Below, piece by piece: positions 23,065-64,000 of a stretch of 64,000 nucleotides of DNA. Position 1 is the first letter of the stretch. Each line of letters begins with the position of its first letter. The notes beneath the pieces are model-generated. The model saw only the letters and a program-made list of their open reading frames with translations, was not told the origin of the DNA and did not search any database. This stretch comes from Heptranchias perlo (lineage: Eukaryota). The stretch spans positions 5,642,001 to 5,706,000 of the forward strand of contig NC_090328.1 of NCBI RefSeq assembly GCF_035084215.1, read 5' to 3'. The position numbers and the translations under genes are program-made.

Positions 23065-23090
23065 TATGGGCACAACCTCAGGTAACAGAG

Positions 23091-24314: not shown

Positions 24315-24732
24315 CTCCCGGGAGGATGAACCGAGCCCCCCTCCCCTCCCCCCCGCCTGCCCAAATCTGATTCACATCTTTCCCCACATCCAGCAGCCTT
24401 TTGGAGGGAGGGTGAGGAGACGGGAGTTTGCAGGGATTGAGGGAGGAGGAGGAGGAGGGCTTCACTCCGCCAAACCCCGGTTAATAGGGGCGGGCTGATC
24501 GGCAGCAATCGATAACCCGGGACCGGCCGCCGAGCAGAGTTTGCAAATAATCCGGAAATGTTCAATCGATAATCCGACAACGATCAGTCAGTGATCCATC
24601 GATCAGTTAATAATCCGGCTCTGGTCAATCGGTAATCCGGCGATGAGGAATCGATAATCTGGTTCCAATCAATCATTAATAAATCAATCCTCCAGCACCG
24701 ATCAATCGTTAATTGACCAATTAGTCAACAAC

Positions 24733-31370: not shown

Positions 31371-32903
31371 GTATTTAGTACTGAACTCCCCTCCGATAGT
31401 TATTCAGTATTAAGTACTCAGATAGTTATTTAGTATTTGTTGAGTAAAGCTGGGATTTTGAAGGGGAGTTTGATATTTGAAACAAAACAATTTAAAATGT
31501 AAACCAAGTGTCTGCCCAGGAGGAGCCAATGAAAATACACAAACAGCTGTTCATTTATTGCACTGTTCACAATGATTGCAGCTCCATCATGTAACTTTGA
31601 TACACTGACAGTGAAACCCCCGACTCACTCTGAGACCAGCGAGTGAAAGCTGACTGACCTCCTGCAATGACCTCCCGTCACAGCCGATGATTTGGAAACA
31701 GCAGCCAGTTCCCCGAGCAAAGCACCCGTAATAATTGGTGTTTCGATCCCGTGAACCCGTCATACCCACAGTCACCTCTGCTCCTTGACCTCTCCCACTA
31801 CTTACATCATAGGTAAAGCCTGTGGCCTATAAATTGGTCCGTTTTCCGGGCGCTAACCGGCCTACTCAACCCCCAATATGGCGGGCAGGAAGCACACACA
31901 CACATTTCAGGCCTGAAGTGCCCAGCCTGCCATATTGGTGCAGGAGAAAAACAACAGGCGTCCAGGGCCCAGGCCTGAAACAGGTGTTAGGCCCTTTGCA
32001 TATGGAAATAAGGAGTCTAATGCCTGGTTCAGGCTCTCACTGCAAGATTGGTTTGCCCTGTGGCAGCCTGCACTGGCATTCAGTGAATCCGGCTTTGGGA
32101 CAGCCTGCTACCTACAAGGTAAGTTTTAGAAATTTACTTACCTGAATGTGGAGTCAGGAGGAGCAGGACTGTTCGCCCTGACCCCAATTTAACAATCGCA
32201 CGCTCCCACTCCCAACCCTCCCTCCCCACCGATCTCTGTCACTCCCGAACCCCGGCCTCCTCTCCTGACCCCCGGCCTCCTCTCCCGACCCCCGACCTCC
32301 TCTCCCGACCCCCCGACCTCCTCTCCCGACCACCGACCCCCTCTCCCGACCCCCGACCTCCTCTCCCAACCACTGACCCCCTCTCCCGACCCCCGACCTC
32401 ATTTACCTGAGGATCGCTGCGACACGAGCAACGGCCCGATCTTGGTCTCCTCATCGCTGACTGGCTGTTCGCATCTCGCAAGCTCCATTACAATGAGGCC
32501 GAGGCCCAATATTGGGGGAGCACCATTCAGGTGCAGGGAGGCCTCACCTCCTCCTCTCCCGTCCCCTCCTCCTCCTCTCCCGTTCCCACTTCCCCTCCCC
32601 ACTCCCCCGCCCCATGCCCGAAATTGCGGTGCTGTAATTGTTACCCCTGTGTGTTTATACAGACTTGTATTGAGAATGATCGTATACGGATTTCATTGGA
32701 ATGACAGTGTGATGCAGAGCCGAGCCGAATAGCTGATTAACAGGAATAATTTTGCACTCAGGACCCAGGATCACTGGGTGAATGATCGCTAAAACGAGTA
32801 CAGGTTAAATTGCTGGATGAGATTCAGTGCGGGGGGCTGGGGGGGAGAGGAACAGCTTTATATTGCAGTTTGGACATTGGGTTTCTCAGCCTCCTGGGAT
32901 GAA

Positions 32904-32919
32904 TCATTCCTGCTCCTTC
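32904..32919 (-). CDS. Candidate terminal coding exon of the Siglec-15-like gene (R-KEQE*)
   Basis: Strong acceptor CTCACTTTAATTGTTCTTGTTTTATCCACAG|G; reading phase 2 from the TM exon gives R-K-E-Q-E-stop. No homology support. Confidence 0.3.
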
Positions 32920-33214
32920 CTGTGGATAAAACAAGAACAATTAAAGTGAGCCGTGTTATCTGTAAAATAGGAGCACTTTTCAGCCCCTCCGTTTACAACC
33001 AGCAGCTGTTTAAATAGGATTCCCCGCGCATTTAAAACTAGATTTGATTGTCAGTCTCGGTGTTAAGGACATGGGTTGCAAACCTAAACATGCAAAGGCA
33101 AATCGAATTAATGGCAGATGCCATTAGATGCCCAGCTACAGCAAATTATGGCCCATTACCATGAATATAGTCTCCATGGATTCTGCATCTATGGGTAAGA
33201 AAATAAGAACATAA

Positions 33215-46116: not shown

Positions 46117-46216
46117 CTGGTTTTGTCCCTGAGTAAAATGATCCACATCACTAAAAGGGCGAGGAGTTTCAATCCAAGTGAAATGGACAACATCGCAATG
46201 GGGAAAAGCTCTGTAA
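46117..46216 (-). CDS. Transmembrane exon of the Siglec-15-like receptor, with intramembrane Lys
   Basis: Pyrimidine tract + CAG acceptor (phase 1; alternative in-frame AG 6 nt downstream) and donor CAG|GTATGT (phase 2). Encodes TELFPIAMLSISLGLKLLALLVMWIILLRDKT; LGLKLL parallels the LGFKAL of mammalian Siglec-15. Confidence 0.82.
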
Positions 46217-46284
46217 CTGAACAGAGAATGAGAGAGATCAAATCGGAGACAAGCAAAGGTGAGAGACTAACAGTGAGAGGCACT

Positions 46285-47002
46285 GGGCTAGAAATTGGGC
46301 CGTGTAGCGGCTGGCAGCGGGTAAAGTAGGGAAGAATATGCATGGGTACGGTAGCATAGTCCTTATGTTACTGGACTAGTAATCCTGAGTATAGTGCATG
46401 GAGCAGTGGATGTGGCTAGTGGTGCAGTTGGTAGGAGATGCCACTTGACATTTGACCTCACTCACCTTGACCACTCGTGCCAAAGCATTGAACTTCTTCC
46501 TGCACTGCGTTCATGTTCATGATGCTATGCTCCTGGGCAATGACTGCCTCTCCTACTGCCTCCTACTGCCTTTTGAGCATATGTCTGGAGGGCCTCTTGC
46601 CTACCTCCACCTTGGATATAGGATGTCCCCTCCTTCTGTCCACCTCTTGCACCAAGCGCATCACTAGTGCATCAGCAGAGAACCTTGGTGCACGCACTCT
46701 CGCAGGCCTGGTACCAACTCAGATTGGCAGATTGGTGAGGTCTGGTGTGCAGATTGGAGGATGTGGGATTTAGTAGTGCACAACCTTTATTCAATGTTTT
46801 AACATAACTCAGTAGTGTGTAAATGTAGGGACAGGAGCTGCATCTGTGTTTTACGGGTGTGATGTCTGATCTCCGTTCAGACTCCGTGCAGACAGCAGAC
46901 TTATTTTTAGCAAATAACAGGTACCGGCAACCTTTAAGAGATTTTGGCAGGCTGTCAGATCGCAATACCCGCCCCGGTTTCGGGCCCGACACAATTTAAC
47001 CC
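46285..47002 (-). mobile_element. Internally deleted PIF/Harbinger-like DNA transposon remnant
   Basis: Imperfect termini GGGCTAGAAATTG / CAATTTAACCC; decayed Myb/SANT-like coding (RAPRFSADAL...LVQEVDRRR...QCRKKFNALARVVK|GTGAGT). Confidence 0.55.
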
Positions 47003-47149
47003 TCACTTAATCAAAACCTGTAGGACTGTAGGCAAGTGTGACACTCGACTGTAGGGCAGAAATATGGTGATTGACGTGATGGAGCTGAGCTAGACAAGGT
47101 ATATGGGCTGTGAATGAAGAACGACAAACGGATAGTAACAATAATATAG

Positions 47150-50100
47150 TATCTCACAGTGACAGGTTAATACTGTAGTATAGTGAGAGGTTAATACTGT
47201 AGTACTTACAGTGACAGGGTTAATACTGTAGTACTTACAGTGACAGGGTTAATTCTGTAGTACTTACAGTGACAGGGTTAATACTGTAGTACTTACAGTG
47301 ACGGGGGTATATACTATAGTACTTACAGTGATGGGGGTATATACTATAGTACTTACAGTGATGGGGTATATACTATCGTACTTACAGTGACAGGGTTAAT
47401 ACTGTAGTACTTACAGTGACAGGGTTAATTCTGTAGTACTTACAGTGACAGGGTTAATACTGTAGTACTTACAGTGACGGGGGTATATACTATAGTACTT
47501 ACAGTGATGGGGGTATATACTATAGTACTTACAGTGATGGGGTATATACTATCGTACTTACAGTGACGGGGGTATATACTATAGTACTTACAGTGACGGG
47601 GGTATATACTATAGTACTTACCGTGATGGGGTCTCTACTATAGTACTTACAGTGATGGGGTATACACTATAGTACTTACAGTGACGGGGTATATACTATA
47701 GTACTTACAGTGATGGGGCATATACTATAGTACATACAGTGACAGAGGTAAATACTCCAGTACTTACAGTGATGGGGCATATACTATAGTACTTACAGTG
47801 ACGGGGGTAAATACTATAGTACTTACCGTGATGGGGCATATACTATAGTACTTACAGTGACAGGGGTAAATACTATAGTACTTACAGTGATGGGGCATAT
47901 ACTATAGTACTTACAGTGATGGGGCATATACCATAGTACTTACAGTGACAGGGGTAAATACTATAGTATTTACAGTGATGGGGCATATACTATAGTACTT
48001 ACAGTGATGGGGGTATATAATATAGCACTTACAGTGATGGGGGTATATACTATAGTACTTACAGTGACGGGGTAAATACTATAGTACTTACAGTGATGGG
48101 GCATATACTATAGTACTTACAGTGATGGGGGTATATATTATAGTACTTACCGTGATGGGGTCTCTACTATAGTACTTACAGTGATGGGGTATATACTATA
48201 GTACTTACAGTGATGGGGTATATACTATAGTACTTACAGTGAAAGGGGTATATACTCTAGTACTTACAGTGAAAGGGGTATATACTCTAGTACTTACAGT
48301 GACAGGGTATATAATATAGTACTTACAGTGACGGGTAAATACTATAGTACTTACAGTGACCGTGGTAATTACAATAGTACTCACAGTGATGGGTAAATAC
48401 TATAGTACTCACAGTGTCAGGGGCAAATACTATAGTAGTTACAGTGACAGGGGTAAATACTATAGTACTTACAGTGACAGGGCAAATACTGTAGTACTTA
48501 CAGTGACAGGAGTAAATACTATAGTACTTACAGTGACAGGTAAATACTATAGTACTGACAGTGATGGGGTAAATACTATAGTACTTACGGTGACAGGAGT
48601 AAATACTATAGTACTTACAGTGATGGGTAAATACTATAGTACTTACAGTGACAGGAGTAAATACTATAGTACTTACCGTGACAGGAGTAAATACTATAGT
48701 ACTTACAGTGATGGGTAAATACTATAGTACTTACGGTGACAGGAGTAAATACTATAGTACTTACAGTGATGGGTAAATACTATAGTACTTACAGTGACAG
48801 GAGTAAATACTATAGTACTGACAGTGACAGGAGTAAATACTATAGTACTTACAGTGATGGGTAAATACTATAGTAGTTACAGTGACAGGAGTAAATACTA
48901 TGGTAATTACTGTGACAGGGTAAATACTATAGAACTTACAGTGACAGGAGTAAATACTATAGTAGTTACAGTGACAGGAGTAAATACTATAGTACTTACA
49001 GTGACAGGAGTAAATACTATAGTAGTTACAGTGACAGGACTAAATACTATTGTACTTACTGTGACGGGGCAAATACTATAGTACTTACAGTGACAGGTAA
49101 ATACTATAGTACTCACAGTGTCAGGGGAAAATACTATAGTAGTTACAGTGACAGGGGTAAATACTATAGTACTTACAGTGACAGGGCAAATACTGTAGTA
49201 CTTACAGTGACAGGAGTAAATACTATAGTACTTAAAGTGACAGGTAAATACTATAGTACTTACAGTGATGGGGTATATACTATAGTACTTACAGTGACAG
49301 GGTATATACTATAGTACTTACAGTGAAAGGGGTATATACTCTAGTACTTACAGTGACAGGGTATATAATATAGTACTTACAGTGACGGGGGTAAATACTA
49401 TAGTACTTGAAGTGACAGGTAAATACTATAGTACTTACAATGGTAGGTGTAAATATTATAGTACTCACAGTGAAAGGGGTATATACTATAGTACTCACGG
49501 TAGCAGGGGTAAATACTATAGTAATTACAGTGGTCAGGGTAAATACTATATTACTTACAGTGATGGGTATATAATATAATAGTTACAGTGATGTGGTATA
49601 TACTATAGTACTTACAGTGGTAGGTGTAAATATTATAGTACTCACAGTGAAAGGGGTAAATACTATAGTACTCACGGTAACATGGGTAAATACTATAGTA
49701 CTTACAGTGACAGGTAAGTACTATAGTACTTACAGTGATGGGTAAATACTATAGTACTTACAGTGATGGTTAAATACTATAGTACTTACAGTGACCGGGG
49801 TAATTACAATAGTACTCACAGTGATGGGTCAATACTATAGTACTCACAGTGTCAGGGGCAAATACTATAGTAGTTACAGTGACAGGGGTAAATACTATAG
49901 TACTTCCAGTGACAGGGCAAATACTGTAGTACTTACAGTGACAGGAGTAAATACTATAGTACTGACAGTGACGGGGTAAATACTATAGTACTTACGGTGA
50001 CAGGAGTAAATACTATAGTACTTACAGTGATGGGTAAATACTATAGTACTTACAGTGACAGGGCAAATACTGTAGTACTTACAGTGACATGAGTAAATAC

Positions 50101-52627
50101 TATAGTACTTACAGTGACCGGGGTAATTACAATAGTACTCACAGTGATGGGTAAATACTATAGTACTCACAGTGTCAGGGGCAAATACTATAGTAGTTAC
50201 AGTGACAGGGGTAAATACTATAGTACTTCCAGTGACAGGGCAAATACTGTAGTACTTACAGTGACAGGAGTAAATACTATAGTACTGACAGTGACGGGGT
50301 AAATACTATAGTACTTACGGTGACAGGAGTAAATACTATAGTACTTACAGTGATGGGTAAATACTATAGTACTTACAGTGACAGGGCAAATACTGTAGTA
50401 CTTACAGTGACATGAGTAAATACTATAGTACTTACTGTGACGGGGTAAATACTATAGTACTTACAGTGACAGGAGTAAATACTATAGTACTTACCGTGAT
50501 GGGTAAATACTATAGTACTTACAGTGACAGGGGTAAATACTATCGTACTTACAGTGACAGGAGTAAATACTATAATACTTACAGTGATGGGTAAATACTT
50601 TAGTACTTACAGTGACAGGTAAATACTATAGTACTTACAGTGACAGGAGTAAATACTCTAGTAGTTACAGTGACAGGACTAAATACTATTGTACTTACTG
50701 TGACGGGGCAAGTACTATAGTACTGACAGTGACAGGAGTAAATACTATAGTACTTACAGTGATGGGTAAATACTATAGTAGTTGCAGTGACAGGACTAAA
50801 TACTATTGTACTTACTGTGACGGGGCAAATACTATAGTACTTACAGTGACAGGTAAATACTATAGTACTCACAGTGTCAGGGGAAAATACTATAGTAGTT
50901 ACAGTGACAGGGGTAAATACTATAGTACTTACAGTGACAGGGTATATAATATAGTACTTACAGTGACGGGGGTAAATACTATAGTACTTGCAGTGACAGG
51001 TAAATACTATAGTACTTACAATGGTAGGTGTAAATATTATAGTACTCACAGTGAAAGGGGTATATACTATAGTACTCACGGTAACAGGGGTAAATACTAT
51101 CGTAATTACAGTGGTCAGGGTAAATACTATATTACTTACAGTGATGGGTATATAATATAGTAGTTACAGTGATGTGGTATATACTATAGTACTTACAGTG
51201 GTAGGTGTAAATATTATAGTACTCACAGTGAAAGGGGTAAATACTATAGTACTCACGATAACATGGGTAAAAACTATAGTACTTACAGTGATGGGTAAAT
51301 ACTATAGTACTTACAGTGACCGGGGTAATTACAATAGTACTCTCAGTGATGGGTAAATACTATAGTACTCACAGTGTCAGGGGCAAATACTATAGTAGTT
51401 ACAGTGACAGGGGTAAATACTATAGTACTTACAGTGACAGGGCAAATACTGTAGTACTTACAGTGACAGGAGTAAATACTATAGTAATTACAGTGACAGT
51501 TAAATACTATAGTACTGACAGTGACGGGGTAAATACTATAGTACTTACGGTACAGGAGTAAATACTATAGTACTTACAGTGATGGGTAAATACTATAGTA
51601 CTTACAGTGACAGGAGTAAAGACTATCGTAGTTACAGTGACAGGAGTAAATACTATAGTACTTACTGTGACAGGGTAAATACTATAGCACTTACAGTGAC
51701 AGGAATAAATACTGTAGTAGTTACAGTGACAGGAGTAAATACTATAGTACTTACTGTGACGGGGTAAATACTATAGTACTTAAAGTGACACGAGTAAATA
51801 CTATAGTACTTACCGTGATGGGTAAATACTATAGTACTTACAGTGACAGGGGTAAATACTATAGTACTTACAGTGACAGGACTAAATACTATTGTACTTA
51901 CTGTGACGGGGCAAATACTATAGTACTTACAGTGACAGGAGTAAATATTATAGTAGTTACAGTGACAGGACTAAATACTATTGTACTTACTGTGACGGGG
52001 TAAGTACTATAGTACTTACAGTGACAGGAGTAAATACTATAGTAGTTACAGTGACAGGAGTAAATACCGTAGTACTTACAGTGCCAGGAGTAAATACTAT
52101 AGTACTTACAGTGACAGGAGTAAATACTATAGTACTTACAGTGACAGGAGTAAATACTATAGTTCTTACAGTGACAGGAGTAAATACTATAGTACTTACA
52201 GTGACAGGGGTAAATACTATAGTACTTACAGTGACGGGGTATATAGTACTTACAGCGACAGGAGTAAATACTATAGTACTCAGTGTCAGGGGTAAATACT
52301 ATAGTAGTTACAGTGACAGGAGTAAATACTATAGTACTCACAGTGTCAGGGGTAAATACTATAGTACTTACAGTGACAGGAGTAAATATTATAGTACTCA
52401 CAGTGTCATGGGTAAATACTACAGTACTTACAGTGACAGGAGTAAATACTATAGTATTCAGTGTCGGGGTAAATACTATAGTACTTACAGTGACAGGAGT
52501 AAATACTATAGTACTTACAGTGACAGGAGTAAATATTATAGTACTTACAATGGTAGGTGTAAATATTATAGTACTCACAGTGAAAGGGGTATATACTATA
52601 GTACTCATGGTAACAGGGGTAAATACC
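47150..52627. repeat. About 30-bp AT-rich minisatellite, about 185 copies
   Basis: Unit GGAGTAAATACTATAGTACTTACAGTGACA (28-30 bp variants). Confidence 0.99.
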
Positions 52628-52880
52628 TTGTTTTTTTTTTATTCGTTCATGGGATGTGGGCGCCGCTGGCAAGGCCAGCATTTATTGCCCATCCCTAATT
52701 GCCCTCGAGAAGGTGGTGGTGAGCCGCCTTCTTGAACCGCTGCAGTCCGTGTGGTGACGGTTCTCCCACAGTGCTGTTAGGAAGGGAGTTCCAGGATTTT
52801 GACCCAGCGACGATGAAGGAACAGCGATATATTTCCAAGTTGGGATGGTGTGTGACTTGGAGGGGAATGTGCAGGTGGTG
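52628..52880 (-). mobile_element. 3' end of a CR1/L2-group LINE (same family as 6107-6340)
   Basis: Near-identical sequence with poly(A) tail (T-run on plus). An older CR1 fragment follows at about 52905-53190. Confidence 0.75.
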
Positions 52881-53199
52881 TTTGGATTCTCTGCTTCAAA
52901 TGTTGATCTACTCTTCCATTAAAAGATACAATAGTCTCTGCCTCAACCATTCCCTCTGACAGAGCATTCCATGCTCCAATAACCCTCTGTGTGAAGAAAT
53001 TTCTCCCAACTCTCTCCTCACTCTGTTAGTGATCGTTTCAAACTGCTGACCCCTCGTCACTGGCTCCCCAACCGGAGGGAATGGATCTTTCCCTATCCAT
53101 CCTATCAAAACCCTTCACTACTTCAAAAACCTCTATCAAATCTCCTCTTAACCTTTTCTGCTCCAGTGGAAACAGTCGCAGTATCTCAAGTCTGCCCAA

Positions 53200-54440
53200 T
53201 AGACAAGCTCCCAATCAGTGTCATTCCCGATGCCAAGGGAGGAAAGAACAAAAGGGAAGGACTCTGATAGGGTGGAGGGCAGGAGTGATTAAATTACAAA
53301 AGGGATGATGATGGTGCAAGGCAAGGAGGGTGGGAATGGGAGAAGTAAAGAAACAAAAGATTGGTCAGGAGTAGCTGTGAATGGCAGCAGCAGAACCATT
53401 ACCAGCACCTACTGTCCGAAAAAATGGGAGCAGTGGTTATGATCTGAAGTTATTGAAATCAATGTTAAGTCCAGAAGGTTGTAAAGTCCCTAATTGAAAG
53501 ATGAGGTGCTGTTTCTTGAGCTTCTGTTGAGCTTCATTGGAACAGTGTAAGAGGCCGAGGACAGAGGGGTCAGAGTGGGAATGGGACGGGGGATTAAAAT
53601 GGCAAACGACCGGCAGGTCAGGGTCTCACTTGCAGACAGAGCGGAGGTGTTCAGCAAAGCGATCACCCAATCTGTGTTTGGTCTCCCCAGTGTAGAGGAG
53701 ACCGCATAGTGAGCAGTGAATACAGTATAGTAAATTGAAAGAAGTGCAAGTAAATCACTGTTTCACCTGGAAGGAGTGTTTGGGGCCGTGGATGGTGGGA
53801 AGGGAGGAGGTGAAAGGGCAGGTGTTGCATCTCCTGCGCTCGCACGGGAAGGTGCCGTGGGGAGGAGAGCGGGTGTTGGGGGTGATGGAAGAGTGGACCA
53901 GGGTGTCACGGAGGGAGCGGTCCCTTCGGGATACTGAAAGGGGAGAGGAGGGGAAGATGGGATCGCGCTGGAGGTGGCGGAAATGGCGGAGGATGATACG
54001 TTGAATGTGGAGGCTGGTGGGGTGGAAGGTGAGGACAAGGGGGACCCTATCATGGTTCTGGGAGGGGAGGGAAGGGGTGAGGGCAGAAGTGAGGGAAATA
54101 GGATGGACACGGTCGAGGCCCCTGTCAACTACAGTGGAGGGAAATCCTCGGTTGAGGATAAAGGAAGACCTAGCAGAAGCACTGGTGTGGAAGGTGACAT
54201 TGTCAGAACAGATGCGACGGAGACGGAGAAACTAGGAGAAGGGAATAGAATCCTCACAGGAAGCAGGGTGGGAGGAAGTGTAATCAAGGTAGCTGTGGGA
54301 GTCGGTGGGCTTATAATAAATATTGGTTGACAGCCTATCACCAGAAATGGAGATAGAGAAGTCGAGGAAGGGAAGGGAAGAGTCGGAGATGGACCAGGTG
54401 AAGACAACGGAAGGGTGGAAATTGGAAGCAAAGTTGATTT
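53200..54440 (-). mobile_element. Penelope-like (Neptune-type) element fragment, copy A
   Basis: Minus-strand RT-thumb/linker (RVPLVLTFHP, RDRSLRDTLV), CxxxxCxxC motif and GIY-YIG-like region. Confidence 0.85.
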
Positions 54441-54442
54441 TT

Positions 54443-55201
54443 TACATCAACGTCAGAGAGCAAATGGGGCCTCGGTTTAACGCCTCATCCGAAAGACAGG
54501 ACCGCCGACAGTGCAGCACTCCCTTAGTACTGCCCCACGGACAGTGCAGCACTCCCTCAGTACAGCCCCTCCGACATTGCAGCACTCCCTCAGCTCTGCC
54601 CCACCGACAGTGCAGCACTCCCTCAGTACCGCCCCTCCGACAGTGCAGCACTCCCTCAGTACCACCCCTCCGACAGTGCAGCACTCCCTCAGTACCACCC
54701 CTCCGACAGTGCAGCACTCCCTCAGTACCGCCCCTCCGACAGTGCAGCACTCCCTCAGTACCACCCCTCCGACAGTGCAGCACTCCCTCAGTATCTCCCC
54801 TCCGACAGTACAGCACTCCCTCAGTATCTCCCCTCCGACAGTACAGCATTCCCTCAGTATCTCCCCTCCGACAGTGCAGCACTCCCTCAGTATCTCCCCT
54901 CCGACAGTACAGCACTCCCTCAGTATCTCCCCTCCGACAGTACAGCGCTCCCTCAGTACTGCCCCTCCGACAGTACAGCACTCCCTCAGTATCTCCCCTC
55001 CGACAGTGCAGCACTCCCTCAGTATCTCCCCTCCGACAGTGCAGCACTCCCTCAGTATCTCCCCTCCGACAGTACAGCACTCCCTCTGTACTGGCACTGG
55101 AGCAACAGCCTGGATTTTGTGCTCAAATCTCTGGAATGGGGACTTGAACCTTTGATCTTCTGACTCAGAGCGACAGTGCTCCCCACTGAGCCATGGCTGA
55201 C
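54443..55201 (-). mobile_element. Deu-type SINE 5' part with an internally amplified 33-bp minisatellite
   Basis: Head TGGCTCAGTGG/GGTTCAAGTCC on the minus strand; unit CCGACAGTGCAGCACTCCCTCAGTACTGCCCCT, about 18 copies. Confidence 0.9.
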
Positions 55202-55275
55202 GAGTGTTTTCTGTTACACCGTCCCCCTCACTGTACAACCTCTCAACACTGGAGAATGTGGGAATGTTTTCTTAC

Positions 55276-55638
55276 TTTGAAAGACCTGCAGCCGTGTCTC
55301 ATTCTGGACCAGATAGTCATTAGGTTTATTTTTGTTCCATCCCTTGTGCTCCACCAGACACAGGTAAGTGCTGCTGTTCTTCACACTCAGCTGGTTTATC
55401 CTGGTTGAGGCGTTTCCCTTCATTGGGTCCCCGACGAGCTCGTACCGATTTCCACCGTTTACCGTAGTCCACGATCCGTTCGATTGGGCTCTAAATGTGA
55501 CTTTGTGTTGGTAGGGCTCCTTCCTCATCCATGTAACACTGAGCTGGAGGGTGATCCCACTGGGCGGTGTGAACATACAGGGCAATGTAACCGAACCTCC
55601 CTCGGTCCCACTCACCACTGGGACATTTCCACCAGCAG
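55276..55638 (-). CDS. Ig V-set exon (domain 3, duplicate of domain 2) of the Siglec-15-like receptor
   Basis: Acceptor TTTGTCCTTTCCTCAG|, donor CAAA|GTAAGA, 363 nt, phase 1/1; GGSVTLPC...W...YLC V-set motifs. Confidence 0.88.
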
Positions 55639-56121
55639 CTGAGGAAAGGACAAACATCAGAATGGATCAGTGTCTTGATGAGAACTTTAATTTATTTCAG
55701 TTCAGTGCTCTCCCTGTGGCCCAGTAGGTAGAGGCCCTGCCCGGTGTAGTTCTCAGCCACTAAAGATTCTGTCTTGATCCTACCTACCTGCATCACACTG
55801 TATTTGTTTAGGTTAAATGCCATTTGCCATTGGTCCCAGAAACGCCAAGAAGATTCCATCGATTTCAGGGGCAATATCGGAGGAGGGTTAAGGTACAGGT
55901 AACGGCACCTCCGACAGTGCAGCACTCTCTCAGTACTGCCCTGAAGGGTGAGCTTAGCAGCAGTGATCCAATCGGCAATGTCTCCCTGAGATCCACCCAC
56001 CAATTCTCCACAGGTCCAACCCGCCCCCATCAGCTTTGGGCTGGACACTGCAGACCCACAGAACTGAGACTGGGCGGTGGGAATCGCTGATTTCAATAAT
56101 ATAAGAACAAATCTCTCGCAT

Positions 56122-57068
56122 CGAAAGATGAGGTGCTGTTCCTCGAGATTACGTTGAGCTTTATTGGAACAATGCAGGAGTCCGAGGACAGAGGGGTCAG
56201 AGTGGGAATGGGACGGGGGATTAAAATGGCAATCGACCGGCAGGTCAGGGTCTCACTTGCGGACAGAGCGGAGGTGTTCAGCAAAGTGATCACCCAATCT
56301 GCGTCTGGTCTCCCCAGTGTAGAGGAGACCGCATTGTGAGCAGTGAATACAGTATAGTAAATTGAAAGAAGTGCAAGTAAATCACTGTTTCACCTGGAAG
56401 GAGTGTTTGGGGCCGTGGATGGTGGGAAGGGAGGAGGTGAAGGGGCAGGTGTTGCATCTCCTGCGCTCGCACGGGAAGGTGCCGTGGGGAGGAGAGCGGG
56501 TGTTTGGGGTGATGGAAGAGTGGACCAGGGTGTCACGGAGGGAGCGGTCCCTTCGGGATACTGAAAGGGGAGAGGAGGGGAAGATGGGATCGCGCTGGAG
56601 GTGGCGGAAATGGCGGAGGATGATACGTTGAACGTGGAGGCAGGTGGGGTGGAAGGTGAGGACAAGGGGGACCCTATCATAGTTCTGGGAGGGAAGGGAA
56701 GGGGTGAGGGCAGAAGTGAGGGAAATAGGACAGACACGGTCGAGGCCCCTGTCAACTACAGTGGAGGGAAATCCTCGGTTGAGGATAAAGGAAGACCTAG
56801 CAGAAGCACTGGTGTGGAAGGTGACATTGTCAGAACAGATGCGACGGAGACGGAGAAACTGGGAGAAGGGAATAGAATCCTCACAGGAAGCAGGGTGGGA
56901 GGAAGTGTAATCAAGGTAGCTGTGGGAGTCAGTGGGCTTACAATAAATATTGGTTGACAGCCTATCACCAGAAATGGAGATAGAGAAGTCGAGGAAGGGA
57001 AGGGTGGAGTCGGAGATGGACCAGGTGAAGACAACGGAAGGGTGAAAATTGGAAGCAAAGTTGATTTT
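56122..57068 (-). mobile_element. Penelope-like fragment, recombinant copy (left part like copy B, right part like copy A)
   Basis: 56122-56190 matches 58880-58950; from about 56190 onward it matches 53563-54440. Confidence 0.88.
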
Positions 57069-57069
57069 T

Positions 57070-57959
57070 TACATCAACGTCAGAAAGCAAATGGGGCCTC
57101 GGTTTAACGCCTCATCTGAAAGACAGGACCGCCGACAGTGCAGCACTCCCTCAGTGCTGCTCCACGGACAGTGCAGCACTCCCTCAGTACTGCCCCTCCG
57201 ACAGTGCAGCACTCCCTCAGTACCACCCCTCCGACAGTGCAGCACTACCTCAGTACCTCCGCTCCGACAGTGCAGCACTCCCTCTGTACTACCCCTCCGA
57301 CAGTACAGCCCTCCCTCTGTACTGCCCCTCCGACAGTGCAGCACTCCCTCTGTACTGCCCCTCCGACAGTGCAGCACTCCCTCTGTACTACCCCTCCGAC
57401 AGTACAGCCCTCCCTCAGTACTGCCCCTCCGACAGTGCAGCACTCCCTCAGTATCTCCCCTCCGACAATGCAGCACTCCCTCTGTACTGCCCCTCCGACA
57501 GTACAGCACTCCCTCTGTAACTCCCCTCCGACAGTGCAGCACTCCCTCAGTATCTCCCCTCCGACAGTGCAGCACTCCCTCAGTACCTCCCCTCCGACAG
57601 TGCAGCACTCCCTCTGTACTGCCCCTCCGACAGTACAGCACTCCCTCTGTAACTCCCCTCCGACAGTGCAGCACTCCCTCAGTATCTCCCCTCCGACAGT
57701 ACAGCGCTCCCTCAGTATCTCCCCTCCGACAGTGCAGCACTCCCTCAGTATCTCCCCTCCGACAGTGCAGCACTCCCTCTGTACTGCCCCTCCGACAGTG
57801 CAGCACTCCCTCAGTATCTCCCCTCCGACAGTACAGCGCTCCCTCTGTACTGCACTGGAGCAACAGCCTGGATTTTGTGCTCAAATCTCTGGAATGGGGA
57901 CTTGAACCTTTGATCTTCTGACTCAGAGCGACAGTGCTCCCCACTGAGCCATGGCTGAC
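57070..57959 (-). mobile_element. Duplicated Deu-type SINE with 33-bp minisatellite (about 22 copies)
   Basis: Paralogue of 54443-55201, about 131 bp longer. Confidence 0.9.
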
Positions 57960-58033
57960 GAGTGTTTTCTGTTACACCGTCCCCCTCACTGTACAACCTC
58001 TCGACACTGGAGAATGTGGGAATGTTTTCTTAC

Positions 58034-58396
58034 TTTGAAAGACCTGCAGCCGTGTCTCATTCTGGACCAGATATTCATTAGGTTTATTTTTGTTCCATCC
58101 CTTGTGCTCCACCAGACACAGGTAAGTGCTGCTGTTCTTCACACTCAGCTGGTTTATCCTGGTTGAGGCGTTTCCCTTCATTGGGTTCCCGACGAGCTCG
58201 TACCGATTTCCACCGTTTACCGTAGTCCACGATCCGTTCGATTGGACTCTAAATGTGACTTTGTGTTGGTAGGGCTCCTTCCTCATCCATGTAACACTGA
58301 GCTGGAGGGTGATCCCACTGGGCGGTGTGAACATACAGGGCAATGTAACCGAACCTCCCTCGGTCCCACTCACCACTGGGACATTTCCACCAGCAG
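58034..58396 (-). CDS. Ig V-set exon (domain 2) of the Siglec-15-like receptor
   Basis: Same splice sites as 55276-55638; 363 nt, phase 1/1. SVTLPCMFTPP..VTWMRKEPY..RYELVGNP..YLCLVE resembles the Siglec-15 V domain. Confidence 0.9.
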
Positions 58397-58879
58397 CTGA
58401 GGAAAGGACAAACATCAGAATGGATCAGTGTCTTGATGAGAACTTTAATTTATTTCAGTTCAGTGCTCTCCCTGTGGCCCAGTAGGTAGAGGCCCTGCCC
58501 GGTGTAGTTCTCAGCCACTAAAGATTCTGTCTTGATCCTACCTACCTGCATCACACTGTATTTGTTTTGGTTAAATGCCATTTGCCATTGGTCCCAGAAA
58601 TGCCAAGAAGATTCCATCGATTTCAGGGGCAATATCGGAGGAGGGTTAAGGTTCAGGTAACGGCACCTCCGACAGTGCAGCACTCTCTCAGTACTGCCCT
58701 GAAGGGTGAACTTAGCAGCAGTGATCCAATCGGCAATGTCTCCCTGAGATCCACCCACCAATTCTCCACAGGTCCAACCCGCCCCCATCAGCTTTGGGCT
58801 GGACACTGCAGACCCACAGAACTGAGACTGGGCGGTGGGAATCGCTGATTTCAATAATATAAGAACAAATCTCTCGCAT

Positions 58880-59625
58880 CGAAAGATGAGGTGCTGTTCC
58901 TCGAGATTACGTTGAGCTTCATTGGAACAATGCAGGAGTCCGAGGACAGAGGTCAGAGTGGGAGTGGGACAGAGAACTAAAATGGCAAGCGACCAGAATC
59001 TCTGGGTCAATACTGCGGACTGAGTGGAGGTGTTCAACAAGGCGATCACCCAGTCTGCGTTTGGTCTCCCCAGTGTAGAGGAGACCTCATTGTGAGTTGG
59101 AAGAAGTGCAAGTAAATTGCTGTTTCACCTGGAAGGAGTGTTTGGGGCCCTGGACGGTGGGAAGGGAGGAGGTGAAGGGGCAGGTGTTGCATCTCCTGCG
59201 CTCACACGGGAAGGTGCCGTGGGGAGGAGAGCGGGTGTTGGGGGTGATGGAAGAGTGGACCAGGGTGTCACGGAGGGAACGGTCTCTTCGGAATGCTGAG
59301 AGGGGAGGGGTGGGAAAGAGATATTTGGCGATGCCATCGGCTGGAAGTGGTGGGTAATGGCGGAAGATGATCCGTTGAACCTGGAGGCTGGTGGGGTAGA
59401 AGGTGAGGACAAGGGGGACCCTATCGTGGTACTGGAAGGGTGGGGGATGTGTGAGGGCAGAAGTGCGGGAAATGGGACGGACACGGTCGAGGGCCCTGTG
59501 AACCACAGTGGAGGGGTATCCTCAGTTGAGGAGAAAGGAAGACGTATCGGATATATCGGAAGCACTGGTGTGGAAGGTGGCATCATCGGAACAGATGTAA
59601 CGGAGATGGAGAAACTGGGAGTAAT
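58880..59625 (-). mobile_element. Penelope-like fragment, copy B
   Basis: ORF 59087-59506: RVPLVLTFYP...FRRDRSLRDTLVHS...PCERRRCNTC...FTCTSSN. Confidence 0.85.
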
Positions 59626-60132
59626 GTGAGAAGTCATGTGAGACTATCACAGGTCTGTACACCCGACCAAGTGGTCTGTTCTCAATCACCTGCGAGACTC
59701 CGTTATTGCTGTTTGGGAAGATCTTTGAAAAGCTGAAGACTTTGAAAATCTGGACTTAATTCCAACTCTATAAACAGGTTCATTTTCCAGTGGTTCAGAA
59801 ACAGGGAAGGTTTAGCACCAGCCTGGCACACAGAGACAGTCTCGACCTTGCCCAGAGACACTGAAGTTTATTTTACTAATTTACTCCGCTCCTCTCCTGA
59901 ATTGCTTGGCTTATGTCTTTGGCATCTAGATAACATCGGTAAGACCAAGGTAACATATTGCTAGACGAGGAAAGACCAAGGTCCATCTACTTCACCTTCT
60001 ACCATCCCGATCCCCTTCAAAGCCCGGGGCTGCTGAGAGCTTATTGATCTGTGGGGCTCAGGACCAGACCAGGTGGAGCCTTTACCCATTGAACTATTGG
60101 GGCAGGTACAGCCCCTGAACATTGTTCCTTAC

Positions 60133-60525
60133 CTCTCACTCCCAGGCTCGTTAGTTCCAATGATTCAAATTTGCCAATATTGAGCTCCACATGACACTTA
60201 TAATAACCGCTGTCCATCTGGTTCAGTCCTTCCATCATTATCGAGGCATCGTTGTCGCTGAGATTCCCCACGAATCTGTATCGATTCCCGCCGTCCTTCT
60301 GTATCACATTCTCACACAGCTTACTCCGTGAATGGCCGGGACCATAATATATACAGTTAAAAGGAACGTGTCTGCTCAATGAGTCCTTTTTGAACCATAT
60401 CACAGAGCCACTGACTGTACGACCAGGGAATGGGGCGGTAAACCTGCACGGCAAGACAGCAGACTGCCCTTCCTCAGCAATCACTTCATCCGGGCCGTGC
60501 ATTGTCCAACCATTAAGATTATACT
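60133..60525 (-). CDS. Ig V-set exon (domain 1) of the Siglec-15-like receptor
   Basis: Acceptor (CT)n-CCCCACACAG|, donor GAG|GTAAGG, 393 nt, phase 1/1. WTMHGPDEVIAEEGQSAVLPCRFT, the FNC...KLC extra Cys pair, RYRFVGN and YKCHVEL..KFES align by eye with the Siglec-15 V-set domain. Confidence 0.92.
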
Positions 60526-60698
60526 CTGTGTGGGGAGAGAGAGAGAGAGAGAGGGGCAATATTAAAACAGCACTGGGTCAGACATTAGTGTTTCGATAAC
60601 ATACTGTGAGACAATATACTGACTCTGATATACAGTGACAACGGATATAACATCACATGGTCAAATTGGGATGGTTTATACTTGGAGAGTGGACATTG

Positions 60699-61292
60699 TG
60701 GAGTGAGTTACAGGCGGGAATCTAATCGAGGGGTTCGGGTGGTTTATAAAAAGAATAATGGAGACCTGGGAGTGAGTTACAGGCTGGAATCTAATCGAGG
60801 GGTTCGGGTGGTTTATAAAAAGAATAATGGAGACCTGGGAGTGAGTTACAGGCTGGAATCTAATCGAGGGGTTCGGGTGGTTTATAAAAAGAATAATGGA
60901 GACCTGGGAGTGAGTTACAGGCTGGAATCTAATCGAGGGGTTCGGGTGGTTTATAAAAAGAATAATGGAGACCTGGGAGTGAGTTACAGGCTGGAATCTA
61001 ATCGAGGGGTTTGGGTGGTTTATAAAAAGAATAATGGAGACCTGGGAGTGAGTTACAGGCGGGAATCTAATCGAGGGGTTTGGGTGGTTTATAAAAAGAA
61101 TAATGGAGACCTGGGAGTGAGTTACAGGCGGGAATCTAATCGAGGGGTTCGGGTGGTTTATATATAGAATAATGGAGACCTGGGAGTGAGTTACAGGCGG
61201 GAATCTAATCGAGGGGTTCGGGTGGTTTATATATAGAATAATGGAGACCTGGGAGTGAGTTACAGGCGGGAATCTAATCGAGGGGTTCGGGT
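60699..61292. repeat. 69-bp tandem repeat, about 8.5 copies
   Basis: Unit GGAGTGAGTTACAGGCTGGAATCTAATCGAGGGGTTCGGGTGGTTTATAAAAAGAATAATGGAGACCTG. Confidence 0.97.
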
Positions 61293-61359
61293 GATTGATA
61301 TATTGGGATTGAGAATCCAGTCCTGATGCAGTGACAGTGGGACCTTGTTCTTCAAAACA

Positions 61360-64000
61360 GCTGAGAGGAGCGGCTCAGAGCAGAGGGAGCTGCGACGGAC
61401 TTCAAAGTGACGTCAGGAATCAGAAAGGGACGCGACACAGGGCAGGAACCTGATTGGTAAGTAGGTTCAGGTGAGTATTTCTACTATTCTACAGTAACTA
61501 AAGTAAAAAGAAAGGCAAGGTCTGTAGCTCTTCCAGCAAGCAGTGTTTTTTAGTGAATCAAGGTCCCTAGTGTAGTTAACATTCTCTAAATTAAGAGTAA
61601 TTTAAAGGAGTAAACTCCTTAAAGGGAGTAACTAACGAGCTTAATCTCAGGCAAGTCATGGCTCGCACCCGTGATATGCTCCTCCTGCACTATGTGGGAA
61701 GTCGTAGACACTACCGGTGTCTCTGGCAACTGTGTGTGCAGGAAGTGTGTCCAGCTGCAGCTACTGGCTAACCACATTTCGGAGCTGGAGCTGCGGGTGG
61801 ATTCACTGTGGAGCATCCGCGATGCTGAGATTATCGTCGATAGCACGTTCAGTGAAGTGGTCACACCGCAGGTAAAGATTACGCAGGCAGAAAGGAAATG
61901 GGTGACCGCCAGGAAGAGTCGAAGGACTAGGCAGGTAGAGCAGGAGTCCCCTGGGGCCATCTCCCTCTCATACAAATATTCTGCTTTAGATACTGTTGGG
62001 GGAGATGGCTTATCAGGGGAAAGCAGCAAGAGCCAAATTCGTGGCACCACGGGTGGCTCTGCTGCACAGGAGGGGAGGAATAAGAGTGGCAGAGCTATAG
62101 TGATGGGGGATTCAATTGTAAGGGGAACAGATAGGCGTTTCTGTGGCCGCAAACGTGACTCCAGGATGGTATGTTGCCTCCCTGGTGCTAGGGTCAAGGA
62201 TGTCACGGAGCGGCTGCAGGGCATTCTGGAGGGGGAGGGTGAACAGCCAGTAGTCGTGGTCCATATCGGTACCAACGACATAGGTAAAAAAAGGGATGAG
62301 GTCCTGCAAGGTGAATTTAAGGAATTAGGAGATAAATTAAAAAGCAGGACCTCAAAGGTAGTGATCTCAGGATTACTACCAGTGCCACGTGCTAGTGAGT
62401 ATAGGAACAGGAGAATAGACAGGATGAATGTGTGGCTGCAGGGATGGTGTAGGAGGGAGGGATTTAGATTCCTGGGACATTGGGACCGGTTCTGGGGAAG
62501 GTGGGACCTGTACAAGCGGGACGGGTTACACCCGAGCAGGACCGGGACCAATGTCCTCGTGGGGGTGTTTGCTAGTGCTGTTGGGGAAGGTTTAAACTAG
62601 AATGGCAGGGGGATGGGAACCTGAGCAGGGAGACAGAGGAGGGGGAAACAAGGATCGAAACAAAAGACAGAAAGAGGAGAAGCAATAGTGGAAGGCAGAG
62701 AAAACAAGCGCGTAAAACAAATAGGGTCATAGTGCAAAATAAAACAATCTTAAAAAGACAAGTCTAAAGGCATTGTGTCTTAATGCGAGGAGCATTCACA
62801 ATAAGGTAGATGAATTAACAGCCCAAAGAGATATTAACGGTTATGATATAGTTGTGATTACGGAGACATGGCTGCAGGCTGACCAAGGATAGGAACTGAA
62901 CATCCAGAGGTATTCAATATTTAGGAAGGACAGGCAAAAAGGGAAAGGAGGTGGGGTAGTTTTGTTAGTAAAGGAGGAAATCAATGCAATAGTGAGGAAG
63001 GATATTGGCTCGGAAAATCAGGATGTGGAATCTGTATGGGTGGAGCTAAGAAACACCAAGGGGCAGAAAACGTTGGTGGGGGTTGTCTATAGGCCCCCAA
63101 ACAGTAGTGAAGATGCAGGGGAGGGCATTAAACAGGAAATTAGAGATGCATGCAAGAAGAGTACAACTATAATCATAGGTGACTTAACATACATATAGAT
63201 TGGTCAAACCAAATTAGCAATAATACTGTGGGGGAGGAATTCCTGGAGTGTGTACATGATGGTTTTCTAGACCAATACATTGAGGAACCAACTAGAGGAC
63301 AGGCGATCCTAGACTGGATAACGTGCAATGAGAAAGGATTAATTAACAATCTTGTTGTGCGGGGTCCCTTAGGGAAGAGCGACCATAACATGATAGAATT
63401 CTTCATTAAGATGGAGAGTGAAGTCGTTGAATCCGAAACTAGGGTCCTGAATCTAAATACAGGAAATTATGAAAGTATGAGGTGTGAGTTGGCTATGATA
63501 GATTGGGGAACTTTACTAAAAGGGATGATGGTGGATAGGCAATGGCTAATATTTAAAGAATGTGTGCAGGAATTACAACAATTATTCATTCCTGTCTGGC
63601 GCAAAAATAAAACAGGAAAGGTAGCTCAACAGTGGCTTACAAAAGAAATTAGGGATAGTATTAGATCCAAAGAGGAGACATACAAAATTGCCAGAAAAAG
63701 CGGCAAGCCTGAGGATTGGGAGCAGTTCAGAATTCAGCAAAGGAGAACAAAGAGATTGATTAAGAGGGGAAAAATAGAGTATGAGAGTAAACTAGCAGGG
63801 AACATAAAAACTGACTGTAAAAGCATCTATAAATATGTCAAGAGAAAAAGATTAGTGAAGACAAATGTAGGTCCCTTACAGTCAGAAATGGGGGAAATTA
63901 TAATGGGGAACAAAGAAATGGCAGAACAATTAAACACATACTTTGGTTCTGTCTTCACAAAGGAGGATACAAATAACCTGCCAGAAATGTTAGGGAACCA
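61360..64000 (+). mobile_element. CR1 LINE 5' part (5' UTR, ORF1, disrupted ORF2), runs off the right edge; 5' boundary approximate
   Basis: ORF1 followed by an APE domain (LCLNARS, ITETWL, YRPP, SDH) with stops and frameshifts. Confidence 0.93.
61671..62600 (+). CDS. CR1 ORF1p (zinc finger/coiled coil + SGNH esterase domain)
   Basis: CSSC...CRKC, GDSIVRG, CLPGA, HIGTND and DGLH motifs. The nearest ATG (61658) is out of frame, so the copy may be non-functional. Confidence 0.88.
   Translation: MICSSCTMWEVVDTTGVSGNCVCRKCVQLQLLANHISELELRVDSLWSIRDAEIIVDSTFSEVVTPQVKITQAERKWVTARKSRRTRQVEQESPGAISLSYKYSALDTVGGDGLSGESSKSQIRGTTGGSAAQEGRNKSGRAIVMGDSIVRGTDRRFCGRKRDSRMVCCLPGARVKDVTERLQGILEGEGEQPVVVVHIGTNDIGKKRDEVLQGEFKELGDKLKSRTSKVVISGLLPVPRASEYRNRRIDRMNVWLQGWCRREGFRFLGHWDRFWGRWDLYKRDGLHPSRTGTNVLVGVFASAVGEGLN

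What the first reader, a model, noticed from the sequence alone, without database searches (positions are those of the whole stretch)
46117..60525. Siglec-15-like activating receptor with non-canonical V-V-V-TM(Lys) architecture
Seen: three symmetric phase-1 V-set exons and a phase-1 TM exon on the same strand join in frame, and the TM helix carries a Lys in LGLKLL. Known: Siglec-15 is V + C2 + TM, and its TM Lys recruits DAP12. Here no C2-set exon is visible, because nearly all sequence between V3 and the TM exon is assignable to repeats. Inference: a lineage-specific multi-V, adaptor-coupled Siglec-15 paralogue. The leader exon was not found and probably lies beyond the right edge.
Basis: partly seen in the sequence, partly recalled or inferred. 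Interest (0 to 1): 0.8.

Follow-up and report, generated by a model that had tools for sequence, protein, structure and literature searches.

The report
Shark Siglec-15-like three-V-domain receptor gene
This stretch of sevengill-shark DNA holds one unit of a tandem family of immune receptors related to Siglec-15, with a recently duplicated third antibody-like domain and an activating-type membrane anchor; the family is already in automatic gene models but I found no paper on it.

Summary
On the minus strand there are three intact, phase-1/phase-1 V-set exons (V1 60133-60525, V2 58034-58396, V3 55276-55638) and a 100-nt transmembrane exon with a Lys (46117-46216). No C2 exon and no leader exon lie anywhere in the 64 kb. 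I add a terminal exon at 32.9 kb.

The organism is Heptranchias perlo. NCBI models XP_067838504/505 carry V1-V2-V3 at 100% identity. XP_067838210 carries the TM(Lys)+RKEQE tail at 100% identity.

V1 is a Siglec-15-type V domain: a family profile hits 7ZOZ at E 1.7e-23, next hit 1e-10. His replaces the essential Arg.

The missing C2 is not special to this locus. V1-V2-TM(Lys) and V1-V2-TM-ITIM genes form a paired family across sharks and rays, sister to the annotated V-V-C2 "SIGLEC15" genes. Only the third V is local, from a ~2.76-kb tandem duplication with 3 exon differences, all non-synonymous.

RNA contigs show V1 expressed and spliced to a V2-type exon. The V3-to-TM(Lys) junction was never seen, and NCBI joins these exons differently.

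The scan met this family before, 320 and 370 kb beyond this window's end. Verdict: real, a new variant of a known kind, of moderate interest.

The parts
60133..60525 (-). V1 exon: Siglec-15-type V-set domain, phase 1/1, His at the position of the essential Arg (YKCHVEL)
   Evidence: Splice sites read. Pfam V-set E 3e-13. Best PDB hit is Siglec-15 7ZOZ. 100% identical to residues 21-151 of XP_067838504. An RNA contig of run X1 matches 60186-60518 with no difference.
58034..58396 (-). V2 exon: second, different V-set domain (V2 type), phase 1/1
   Evidence: 100% identical to the second V of XP_067838504. V2-type clade supported at 100/99. V2-specific letters were not seen in RNA contigs.
55276..55638 (-). 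V3 exon: tandem duplicate of V2 with 3 nucleotide differences, all non-synonymous (A/V, D/N, D/E)
   Evidence: 100% identical to the third V of XP_067838504. A 363-nt RNA contig of run X1 ends exactly at both exon borders and has 1 difference.
46117..46216 (-). Transmembrane exon with Lys in LGLKLL; phase 1 in, phase 2 out
   Evidence: 100% identical to the TM of XP_067838210. The LG-x-K motif is shared with SIGLEC15 of bony vertebrates.
32858..32919 (-). Coding part of the terminal exon, read in two frames. After the TM exon it gives R-KEQE-stop (stop at 32904-32906). Joined directly to a V exon (TM skipped) it gives RRSRNDSSQEAEKPNVQTAI-stop (stop at 32858-32860).
   Evidence: sequence, acceptor AG at 32920-32921. 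(100% match to the tail of XP_067838211). (RKEQE tail of XP_067838210). The first AATAAA on this strand is at 31554-31559.
53493..59056 (.). Two tandem copies of a ~2.7-kb unit (about 53493-56300 and 56120-59056). Each holds a dispersed repeat, a 33-bp satellite and one V2-type exon. A third, older copy of the dispersed repeat lies at 58878-59621.
   Evidence: Unit identity is about 95%. The 400 nt upstream of the exons differ at 4 places. The satellites have 17.8 and 21.9 copies.
47140..52626 (.). 5.4-kb 30-bp minisatellite filling most of the V3-TM intron
   Evidence: 185 copies, 84% matches.

Best explanation
The window holds all but the leader exon of one unit of a tandem cluster of Siglec-15-related receptors in the sevengill shark Heptranchias perlo. 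The unit encodes a type I membrane protein. It has a Siglec-15-type V domain (V1), then two nearly identical copies of a second kind of V domain (V2, V3) made by a recent ~2.76-kb tandem duplication. Next come a transmembrane helix with a mid-membrane Lys and a five-residue tail (RKEQE) from a terminal exon 13 kb downstream. By analogy with Siglec-15, the Lys would pair with the Asp of a DAP12-type ITAM adaptor, making this the activating half of a paired activating/inhibitory family. The inhibitory halves carry the same V1-V2 ectodomain on an uncharged TM with ITIM tails. His replaces the essential sialic-acid-binding Arg in V1, so canonical sialic-acid binding is probably weakened or lost. 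The same replacement is seen in about a third of the activating members and in none of the inhibitory ones. Skipping the TM exon would give a soluble form that reads the terminal exon in another frame. Shown: the exons, their phases, their family and expression of V1, including a V1 to V2-type splice. Inferred: the V3 to TM(Lys) junction, adaptor pairing, and ligand.
For: Exon anatomy and phases. Pfam V-set for all three V exons. V1 matches Siglec-15 7ZOZ at E 2e-10 alone and 1.7e-23 with a profile, and the four Cys align. Family-wide V1-V2-TM(Lys)-RK(E/R)Q(D/E) and V1-V2-TM-ITIM models occur in at least 20 elasmobranch species. In the tree, winV1 lies inside the elasmobranch V-V clade (100/99), which is sister to the chondrichthyan V-V-C2 clade (95/87); the V2 type forms one clade (100/99). 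The TM exon and RKEQE tail are identical to XP_067838210, and V1-V2-V3 are identical to XP_067838504/505. RNA contigs cover exons and leave unique intron stretches empty (the repeat-filled intron bins are deep, as expected of repeats transcribed elsewhere); V1 is matched exactly, with a GT..AG joint 60133 to 58396 (V2 or V3 start); a V2-type donor to V2-type acceptor joint is also present. A stingray model has V1-V2-V2-TM(Lys)-RKRQD. Arg census: 23 of 23 ITIM-type first V1 domains keep Arg against 14 of 22 TM-Lys-type (Fisher p 0.0015, not corrected for relatedness), so a His V1 fits the activating class. The LG-x-K TM motif is shared with SIGLEC15 from fish to mammals.
Against: The V3 to TM(Lys) junction was not observed. 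NCBI's models splice V3 to a fourth V (WPRGIITR variant) plus an ITIM tail lying outside the window, and give the TM(Lys)/RKEQE tail to a different V1'-V2' pair. One RNA contig does join a V2-type exon end to the WPRGIITR-variant exon. V2-specific letters were not found in RNA contigs, and the V3-like contig differs by one letter (Q to E), so some RNA comes from alleles or paralogues. The backbone of the tree does not resolve the chondrichthyan V1 domains with bony-vertebrate SIGLEC15 against other groups.
Confidence: 0.58

Rival explanations
1. NCBI's annotation is literally right. V1-V2-V3 are the 5' half of a long inhibitory receptor (V-V-V-V-TM-ITIM, XP_067838504/505) whose remaining exons lie more than 55 kb downstream. 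The TM(Lys) and terminal exons in the window are 3' exons used by an upstream V1'-V2' unit (XP_067838210-213). The locus would then be a set of V-exon cassettes sharing or exchanging 3' signalling modules.
For: V1-V2-V3 are 100% identical to XP_067838504/505, and the TM/RKEQE and soluble tails are 100% identical to XP_067838210/211. An RNA contig of run X2 joins a V2-type exon end to the WPRGIITR-variant V exon. V1-V2-V1-V2-ITIM models recur in other sharks and rays. All V exons are phase 1/1, so any such join stays in frame.
Against: Each unit has its own leader, and so probably its own promoter. The window's TM(Lys) and terminal exons lie at ordinary intron distances (9 and 13 kb) behind V3. 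The last 30 nt of V2-type exons are identical between copies, so junction reads can be threaded onto the wrong donor. It would be the only ITIM-type model of 24 with a non-Arg first V1. Identical 38- and 19-residue tails can also be explained by recent duplication, given about 2% nucleotide divergence.
Confidence: 0.27
2. The third V is not real biology. The V2/V3 duplication is an assembly artefact or a haplotype-specific copy-number variant, and the usual product is the family-standard V1-V2-TM(Lys).
For: The exons and near flanks are 99% identical, and satellites flank both copies. No V2-specific letter appears in the contigs of four RNA runs (depth 0 at 58064-58242). The NCBI models come from the same assembly, so they are not independent.
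Against: The two units differ in satellite copy number and are only about 95% identical overall, with three non-synonymous exon differences. A collapsed or expanded artefact would be expected to be identical. Logan contigs drop minor variants, so absence is weak evidence. A V2-type to V2-type splice exists in RNA. An independent V2 duplication is modelled in Hemitrygon akajei.
Confidence: 0.1
3. It is the shark orthologue of SIGLEC15 itself, having swapped its C2 domain for V domains.
For: The best solved-structure match is Siglec-15. The TM has the LG-x-K motif. NCBI names many members of this family 'sialic acid-binding Ig-like lectin 15'.
Against: H. perlo has a separately annotated SIGLEC15 (286-aa model, V-V-C2-TM(Lys)) on the same chromosome-sized record. 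The tree places the window's V1 in a different, well-supported clade from that gene's relatives. The window's family has many copies per genome, including ITIM forms.
Confidence: 0.04

Closest known systems
Siglec-15 (SIGLEC15) of bony vertebrates; structure 7ZOZ
   Same: The N-terminal V domain is of the same type, including the extra Cys pair. The TM Lys sits in an LG-x-K-(L/V)-L motif at the same depth. The cytoplasmic tail is short. The exons are phase 1.
   Different: There is no C2 domain and there are two extra V domains of another type. His replaces the essential Arg (R143 in human). The gene belongs to a multicopy tandem family with inhibitory partners, whereas SIGLEC15 is a single conserved gene. 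It is not the orthologue.
Chondrichthyan V-V-C2 'SIGLEC15' and its ITIM partner (e.g. H. perlo P0293 and XP_067838218, Callorhinchus XP_042192165)
   Same: V1 type followed by V2 type. There are TM(Lys) and ITIM versions. It is the sister clade of the window's family.
   Different: These genes keep a C2 domain before the membrane and lack the extra Cys pair in V1. The window's family has lost C2.
NCBI automatic models XP_067838504/505 (pIgR-like), XP_067838210-213 of Heptranchias perlo, and Hemitrygon akajei V1-V2-V2-TM(Lys) (P0249)
   Same: Their residues are identical to the window's V1-V2-V3 and to its TM(Lys)/tails. The stingray model has the same V-V-V-TM(Lys) plan.
   Different: No H. 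perlo model joins V3 to the TM(Lys) exon. The models carry uninformative names, and I found no paper describing them.
Paired activating/inhibitory Siglecs of primates (Siglec-5/14, Siglec-11/16) and other paired Ig receptors (PILR, SIRP, KIR, teleost NITR, skate MDIR)
   Same: Near-identical ectodomains sit on either an ITIM tail or a charged-TM, adaptor-coupled anchor. Partners cluster by species in the tree, as expected from gene conversion or recent duplication. (family knowledge.)
   Different: The lineage and domain make-up differ. Here the activating partners, but never the inhibitory ones, lose the essential Arg. The relation to skate MDIRs could not be tested because no MDIR sequence was available.

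Membership tests
Siglec-15 (orthologue group) | N-terminal V-set domain of Siglec-15 type with the additional Cys pair | tested here: met
   7ZOZ is the top hit alone (E 2e-10) and with a family profile (E 1.7e-23; next hit JAML at 1.2e-10). All four Cys align.
Siglec-15 (orthologue group) | Essential Arg on strand F (human R143, motif CRVE) | tested here: not met
   V1 reads YKCHVEL, so His aligns with R of YFCRVEF. V2 and V3 have Leu at that position.
Siglec-15 (orthologue group) | One C2-set domain between V and the membrane | tested here: not met
   A C2 HMM built from 22 Siglec-15-type C2 domains finds no exon in any frame of the 64 kb. tblastn with P0053 and P0018 finds none either.
Siglec-15 (orthologue group) | Lys in the transmembrane helix | tested here: met
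   LGLKLL lies in exon 46117-46216. The Lys is in register with LGIK/LGLK/LGAK of lungfish, bird, mammal, frog and teleost SIGLEC15. Linkage of this exon to V3 is not shown.
Siglec-15 (orthologue group) | Orthology: a single-copy gene that groups with SIGLEC15 of other species | tested here: not met
   A separate H. perlo SIGLEC15 model (P0293) exists, and winV1 lies in a different starred clade. Synteny was not testable.
Siglec-15 (orthologue group) | Association with DAP12/DAP10 and binding of sialylated glycans | not testable with these tools
   Needs co-immunoprecipitation and glycan binding assays.
Elasmobranch V1-V2 Siglec-15-related paired receptors (unnamed, automatic models only) | V1-type domain followed by V2-type domain, each on a phase-1/1 exon | tested here: met
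   winV1 lies in the family clade at 100/99, and winV2/V3 lie in the V2-type clade at 100/99. Phases were read.
Elasmobranch V1-V2 Siglec-15-related paired receptors (unnamed, automatic models only) | Activating module: TM(Lys) exon plus a short RK(E/R)Q(D/E) tail spliced after the last V | tested here: inconclusive
   Both exons are present, in frame and 100% identical to XP_067838210. The junction 55276 to 46216 was not covered by the RNA contigs laid.
Classical (CD33-related / MAG-type) Siglecs | V domain with the F-R-(I/V)-E motif type, followed by C2 domains | tested here: not met
   Shark classical Siglecs form a separate clade on a branch of 1.87 changes per column. CD33 and Siglec-8 are weak PDB hits, E 1e-4 to 1e-3.
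Skate modular-domain immune-type receptors (MDIR) | Sequence relationship to published MDIR domains | not tested
   No MDIR sequence was reachable with the tools. None of the named hits carried that name. Only one paper in the library mentions the family.

The most novel reading that the evidence does not exclude
The cluster may work as a cassette system. Because every V exon is phase 1/1, one promoter-plus-V-exon unit can be spliced either to the nearby TM(Lys) module or, by skipping it, to the next unit's V exons and ITIM module. The same ligand-binding head would then be made in activating, inhibitory and soluble forms from one transcription unit. The interleaved NCBI models and the V2-type to WPRGIITR-exon RNA joint would be real products and not annotation noise.
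Probability: 0.15. Interest if true: 0.7.

Novelty: new variant of a known kind. Interest (0 to 1): 0.4.

Why it matters
The finding places a Siglec-15-derived, paired activating/inhibitory receptor family in cartilaginous fishes. The adaptor-coupling Lys motif matches that of mammals, so this signalling design would date to the base of jawed vertebrates. It also gives a clean natural example of domain gain by tandem exon duplication. The activating members, but not the inhibitory ones, lose the sialic-acid-binding Arg, which bears on how paired receptors avoid self-reactivity. The family has automatic gene models but, as far as my searches reach, no description in the literature.

Tried and rejected

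Literature searches found no paper on this family: 'Siglec-15' + shark; Siglec + cartilaginous fish + paired receptors; modular domain immune-type receptor.

A leader exon was sought in the window with a low-stringency tblastn and not found.

The reading that this is the SIGLEC15 orthologue was rejected.

The dispersed repeat flanking the V2-type exons was called Penelope in another first-stage note. Pfam gave no hit on its ORFs, so I leave it unnamed.

A kinase-like ORF at 24045-24371 gave no Pfam or PDB hit.

Each exon was searched apart, and only proteins already in public databases were used whole. No structure prediction was run, because sequence evidence for the V-domain type was already decisive and V-set folds discriminate poorly.

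Full report
ANATOMY. The gene lies on the minus strand. Reading the sequence gives four exons.
- V1 is 60133-60525, 393 nt. Its acceptor is ...cacag|AG and its donor AGAG|gtaagg. It is phase 1 at both ends.
- V2 is 58034-58396, 363 nt, with ...cctcag|CT and CAAA|gtaaga, phase 1/1.
- V3 is 55276-55638, with the same sites, phase 1/1.
- The TM exon is 46117-46216, 100 nt, with ...gttcag|TT and CCAG|gtatgt. It encodes TELFPIAMLSISLGLKLLALLVMWIILLRDKT.

The TM exon leaves in phase 2, so the reading frame must continue in another exon.

I found that exon by tblastn with relatives and read it. The acceptor AG is at 32920-32921 and the exon starts at 32919. After the TM exon it gives R-K-E-Q-E-stop, with TGA at 32904-32906. 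Joined directly to a phase-1 V exon it gives RRSRNDSSQEAEKPNVQTAI-stop, with TAA at 32858-32860. So one exon is read in two frames, depending on whether the TM exon is included.

The window has no N runs.

NOT CHANCE, AND NOTHING HIDDEN. All three V exons match Pfam V-set, at E 3e-13 to 4e-15. An HMM of the V1 family run against every stop-to-stop segment in six frames finds exactly these three exons in 64 kb. An HMM built from 22 Siglec-15-type C2 domains finds only weak cross-hits on the same three exons, and nothing else below E = 3. tblastn with bird Siglec-15 and with a same-species V-V-C2 protein also finds no C2 exon.

The V3-TM intron is 9.06 kb and is mostly repeat. It holds a 30-bp minisatellite at 47140-52626, a 33-bp satellite at 54505-55092, and a dispersed repeat at 53493-54238. 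No leader exon is in the window.

ORGANISM AND EXISTING MODELS. A search of 1.84 billion representatives with V1 alone, followed by cluster look-ups, leads to Heptranchias perlo. Three sets of NCBI models are relevant.
They then continue into a fourth V2-type domain (WPRGIITR variant), an uncharged TM and an ITIM tail. None of those exons is in the window.
- XP_067838210 carries ITELFPIAMLSISLGLKLLALLVMWIILLRDKTRKEQE. This is identical to the window's TM and terminal exons, but it sits behind a V1'-V2' pair that is only 87-92% identical to the window's V exons and is not in the window.
- XP_067838211 has the TM-skipped tail, identical to the window's terminal exon in the other frame.

So V-V-V is already modelled, and so is the TM(Lys) tail, but no model joins the two.

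RNA. One search for runs gave four runs of one sample. About a fifth of the sampled words were held, which is the exon share of the stretch. Laid on 55200-60560, their contigs end exactly at exon borders. Unique intron bins have zero depth (58064-58242 is actually the V2 exon interior; the empty intron bins are 58422-58600 and 59675-59853), so these runs behave as RNA.
- Run X1 matches V1 with no difference over 60186-60518 and 60140-60215.
- X1 has a GT..AG joint 60133 to 58396. The 30 letters on the V2 side are identical in V2 and V3.
- A 363-nt contig of X1 fits V3 at all three V2/V3-diagnostic sites. It has one difference, 55393, which changes Q to E.
- Run X2 has a contig joining the end of a V2-type exon to a V exon with the WPRGIITR variant. 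This is a V2-type to V2-type splice.
- Contigs of X2-X4 carry the letters of the V1'/V2' paralogue.
- V2-specific letters were not seen. Logan contigs drop minor variants, so this is weak evidence of absence.
- The junction from V3 to the TM exon lay outside the 6,000-letter limit.

WHAT FAMILY. V1 alone hits human Siglec-15 (7ZOZ) best, at E 2e-10, with all four Cys aligned and His opposite R143. A profile of ten family members raises this to E 1.7e-23, while the next hit (JAML) stays at 1.2e-10. V2/V3 is a different V-set type, roughly equidistant from TIM-1, Siglec-15 V, CD276 and pIgR at E about 1e-8.

Homologue searches show a large family in sharks and rays. Its members take several forms:
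- V1-V2-TM(Lys)-RK(E/R)Q(D/E);
- V1-V2-TM-ITIM;
- V1-TM;
- TM-less;
- V1-V2-V1-V2-ITIM.

NCBI names these variously Siglec-15, Siglec-12, JAML-like, pIgR-like or 'uncharacterized'. A second, related set keeps a C2 domain. It includes V1-V2-C2-TM(Lys) genes (among them the annotated H. perlo SIGLEC15, P0293, and Callorhinchus) and V1-V2-C2-TM-ITIM genes (XP_067838218).

In a maximum-likelihood tree of 63 V domains:
- winV1 groups with the two other H. perlo V1s (99/95);
- that group lies inside the elasmobranch V-V family (100/99);
- the V-V family is sister to the V-V-C2 set (95/87);
- all V2-type domains form one clade (100/99);
- shark classical Siglecs sit on a long separate branch;
- the backbone joining these groups to bony-vertebrate SIGLEC15 is not resolved.

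Activating and inhibitory members cluster by species, as in other paired receptor families.

The missing C2 is therefore a trait of a whole subfamily, and V-V is old. Only the third V is local.

THE DUPLICATION. Units of about 2.7 kb (53493-56300 and 56120-59056) are about 95% identical overall and 99% identical around the exons, with 4 differences in the 400 nt upstream. Their satellites have 17.8 and 21.9 copies. The two exons differ at three nucleotides, all non-synonymous: A/V, D/N and D/E. A stingray model (Hemitrygon akajei, P0249) shows an independent V1-V2-V2-TM(Lys)-RKRQD. That shows the V-V-V-TM(Lys) plan is viable and recurrent.

HOW IT PROBABLY WORKS. Aligned on the Lys, the window's TM (SLGLKLL) shares an LG-x-K-(L/V/T)-L motif at the same depth with SIGLEC15 of lungfish, bird, mammal, frog and teleost. 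In Siglec-15 that Lys recruits DAP12; this is established knowledge and was not tested here. I therefore read the TM(Lys)+RKEQE module as an adaptor-coupled, activating anchor.

Among distinct first V1 domains of the family, 23 of 23 on ITIM tails keep the Arg. On TM(Lys) anchors 14 of 22 keep it, and 8 have H, H, H, Y, C, S, K or Q (Fisher p 0.0015). This is not corrected for relatedness, but the replacements differ between lineages.

The window's His-bearing V1 thus fits the activating class. NCBI's V1(His)...ITIM join would be the only exception. Together with the ordinary spacing of the TM and terminal exons behind V3, and each unit having its own leader, this makes V1-V2-V3-TM(Lys)-RKEQE the most likely main product. 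I put it at about 0.58. The annotation-literal reading gets about 0.27 and an artefactual or polymorphic third V about 0.1.

COMPARISON AND NOVELTY. It works like Siglec-15 or like the activating half of Siglec-5/14-type pairs. It is not a SIGLEC15 orthologue, because three defining features fail (Arg, C2, orthology). It is a member of an unnamed chondrichthyan family that exists only as automatic models. Three literature searches found no description.

Earlier notes of this scan had already met the family 320 and 370 kb beyond this window's end, and had noted the duplication and the Arg loss on this same stretch. I re-tested those points here.

Exons were searched one by one. I made no joined spliced sequence for any tool.

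Noticed in passing
window 32858-32919 (-): The terminal exon is read in two frames. After the TM exon it gives RKEQE-stop. After a V exon, with the TM skipped, it gives RRSRNDSSQEAEKPNVQTAI-stop. Both tails occur in models of H. perlo, Heterodontus and Pristiophorus, so the dual use looks conserved.
   Followed up: partly
family-wide (proteins); window 60199-60201 (His codon of V1): The essential Arg of V1 is kept in 23 of 23 ITIM-type members but in only 14 of 22 TM(Lys)-type members. The elasmobranch V-V-C2 'SIGLEC15' TM(Lys) genes also have Leu there, while their ITIM partner keeps Arg.
   Followed up: partly
window 55276-55638 and 60133-60525: Differences between paralogous V exons are almost all non-synonymous. 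V2 against V3 is 3 of 3. RNA-contig variants on V3 are 10 of 11. On V1, 5 changes alter 4 codons. This suggests diversifying selection or patchy gene conversion.
   Followed up: partly
window 55393: All four RNA runs read C instead of G (Q to E, INELSV) on an otherwise V3-type exon. This combination is in no annotated H. perlo protein, so it may be an allele or a further paralogue.
   Followed up: no
window 24045-24371 (-): An open frame ends in ...[14 protein letters not shown]. From memory this resembles the glycine loop of a TESK/LIMK-type kinase first exon. Pfam and PDB gave no hit, so it is unverified. If real, a same-strand gene lies between this unit and any downstream ITIM exons.
   Followed up: partly
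window 47140-52626: A 5.4-kb minisatellite (30-bp unit, 185 copies) produces many long spurious ORFs on both strands inside the V3-TM intron.
   Followed up: yes
window 2-2827 (+), 61671-62600 (+), 33230-33487 (+): LINE fragments. One ORF has endonuclease plus reverse transcriptase. Another is an ORF1 with a GDSL-type esterase domain (Pfam), and a copy of it lies just upstream of the terminal exon.
   Followed up: partly
window 15102-16316, 18905-20021, 23058-24326, 60700-61300: There are several further long tandem arrays, including a 69-bp array starting about 175 bp (60700) upstream of V1. They give long ORFs in several frames.
   Followed up: no
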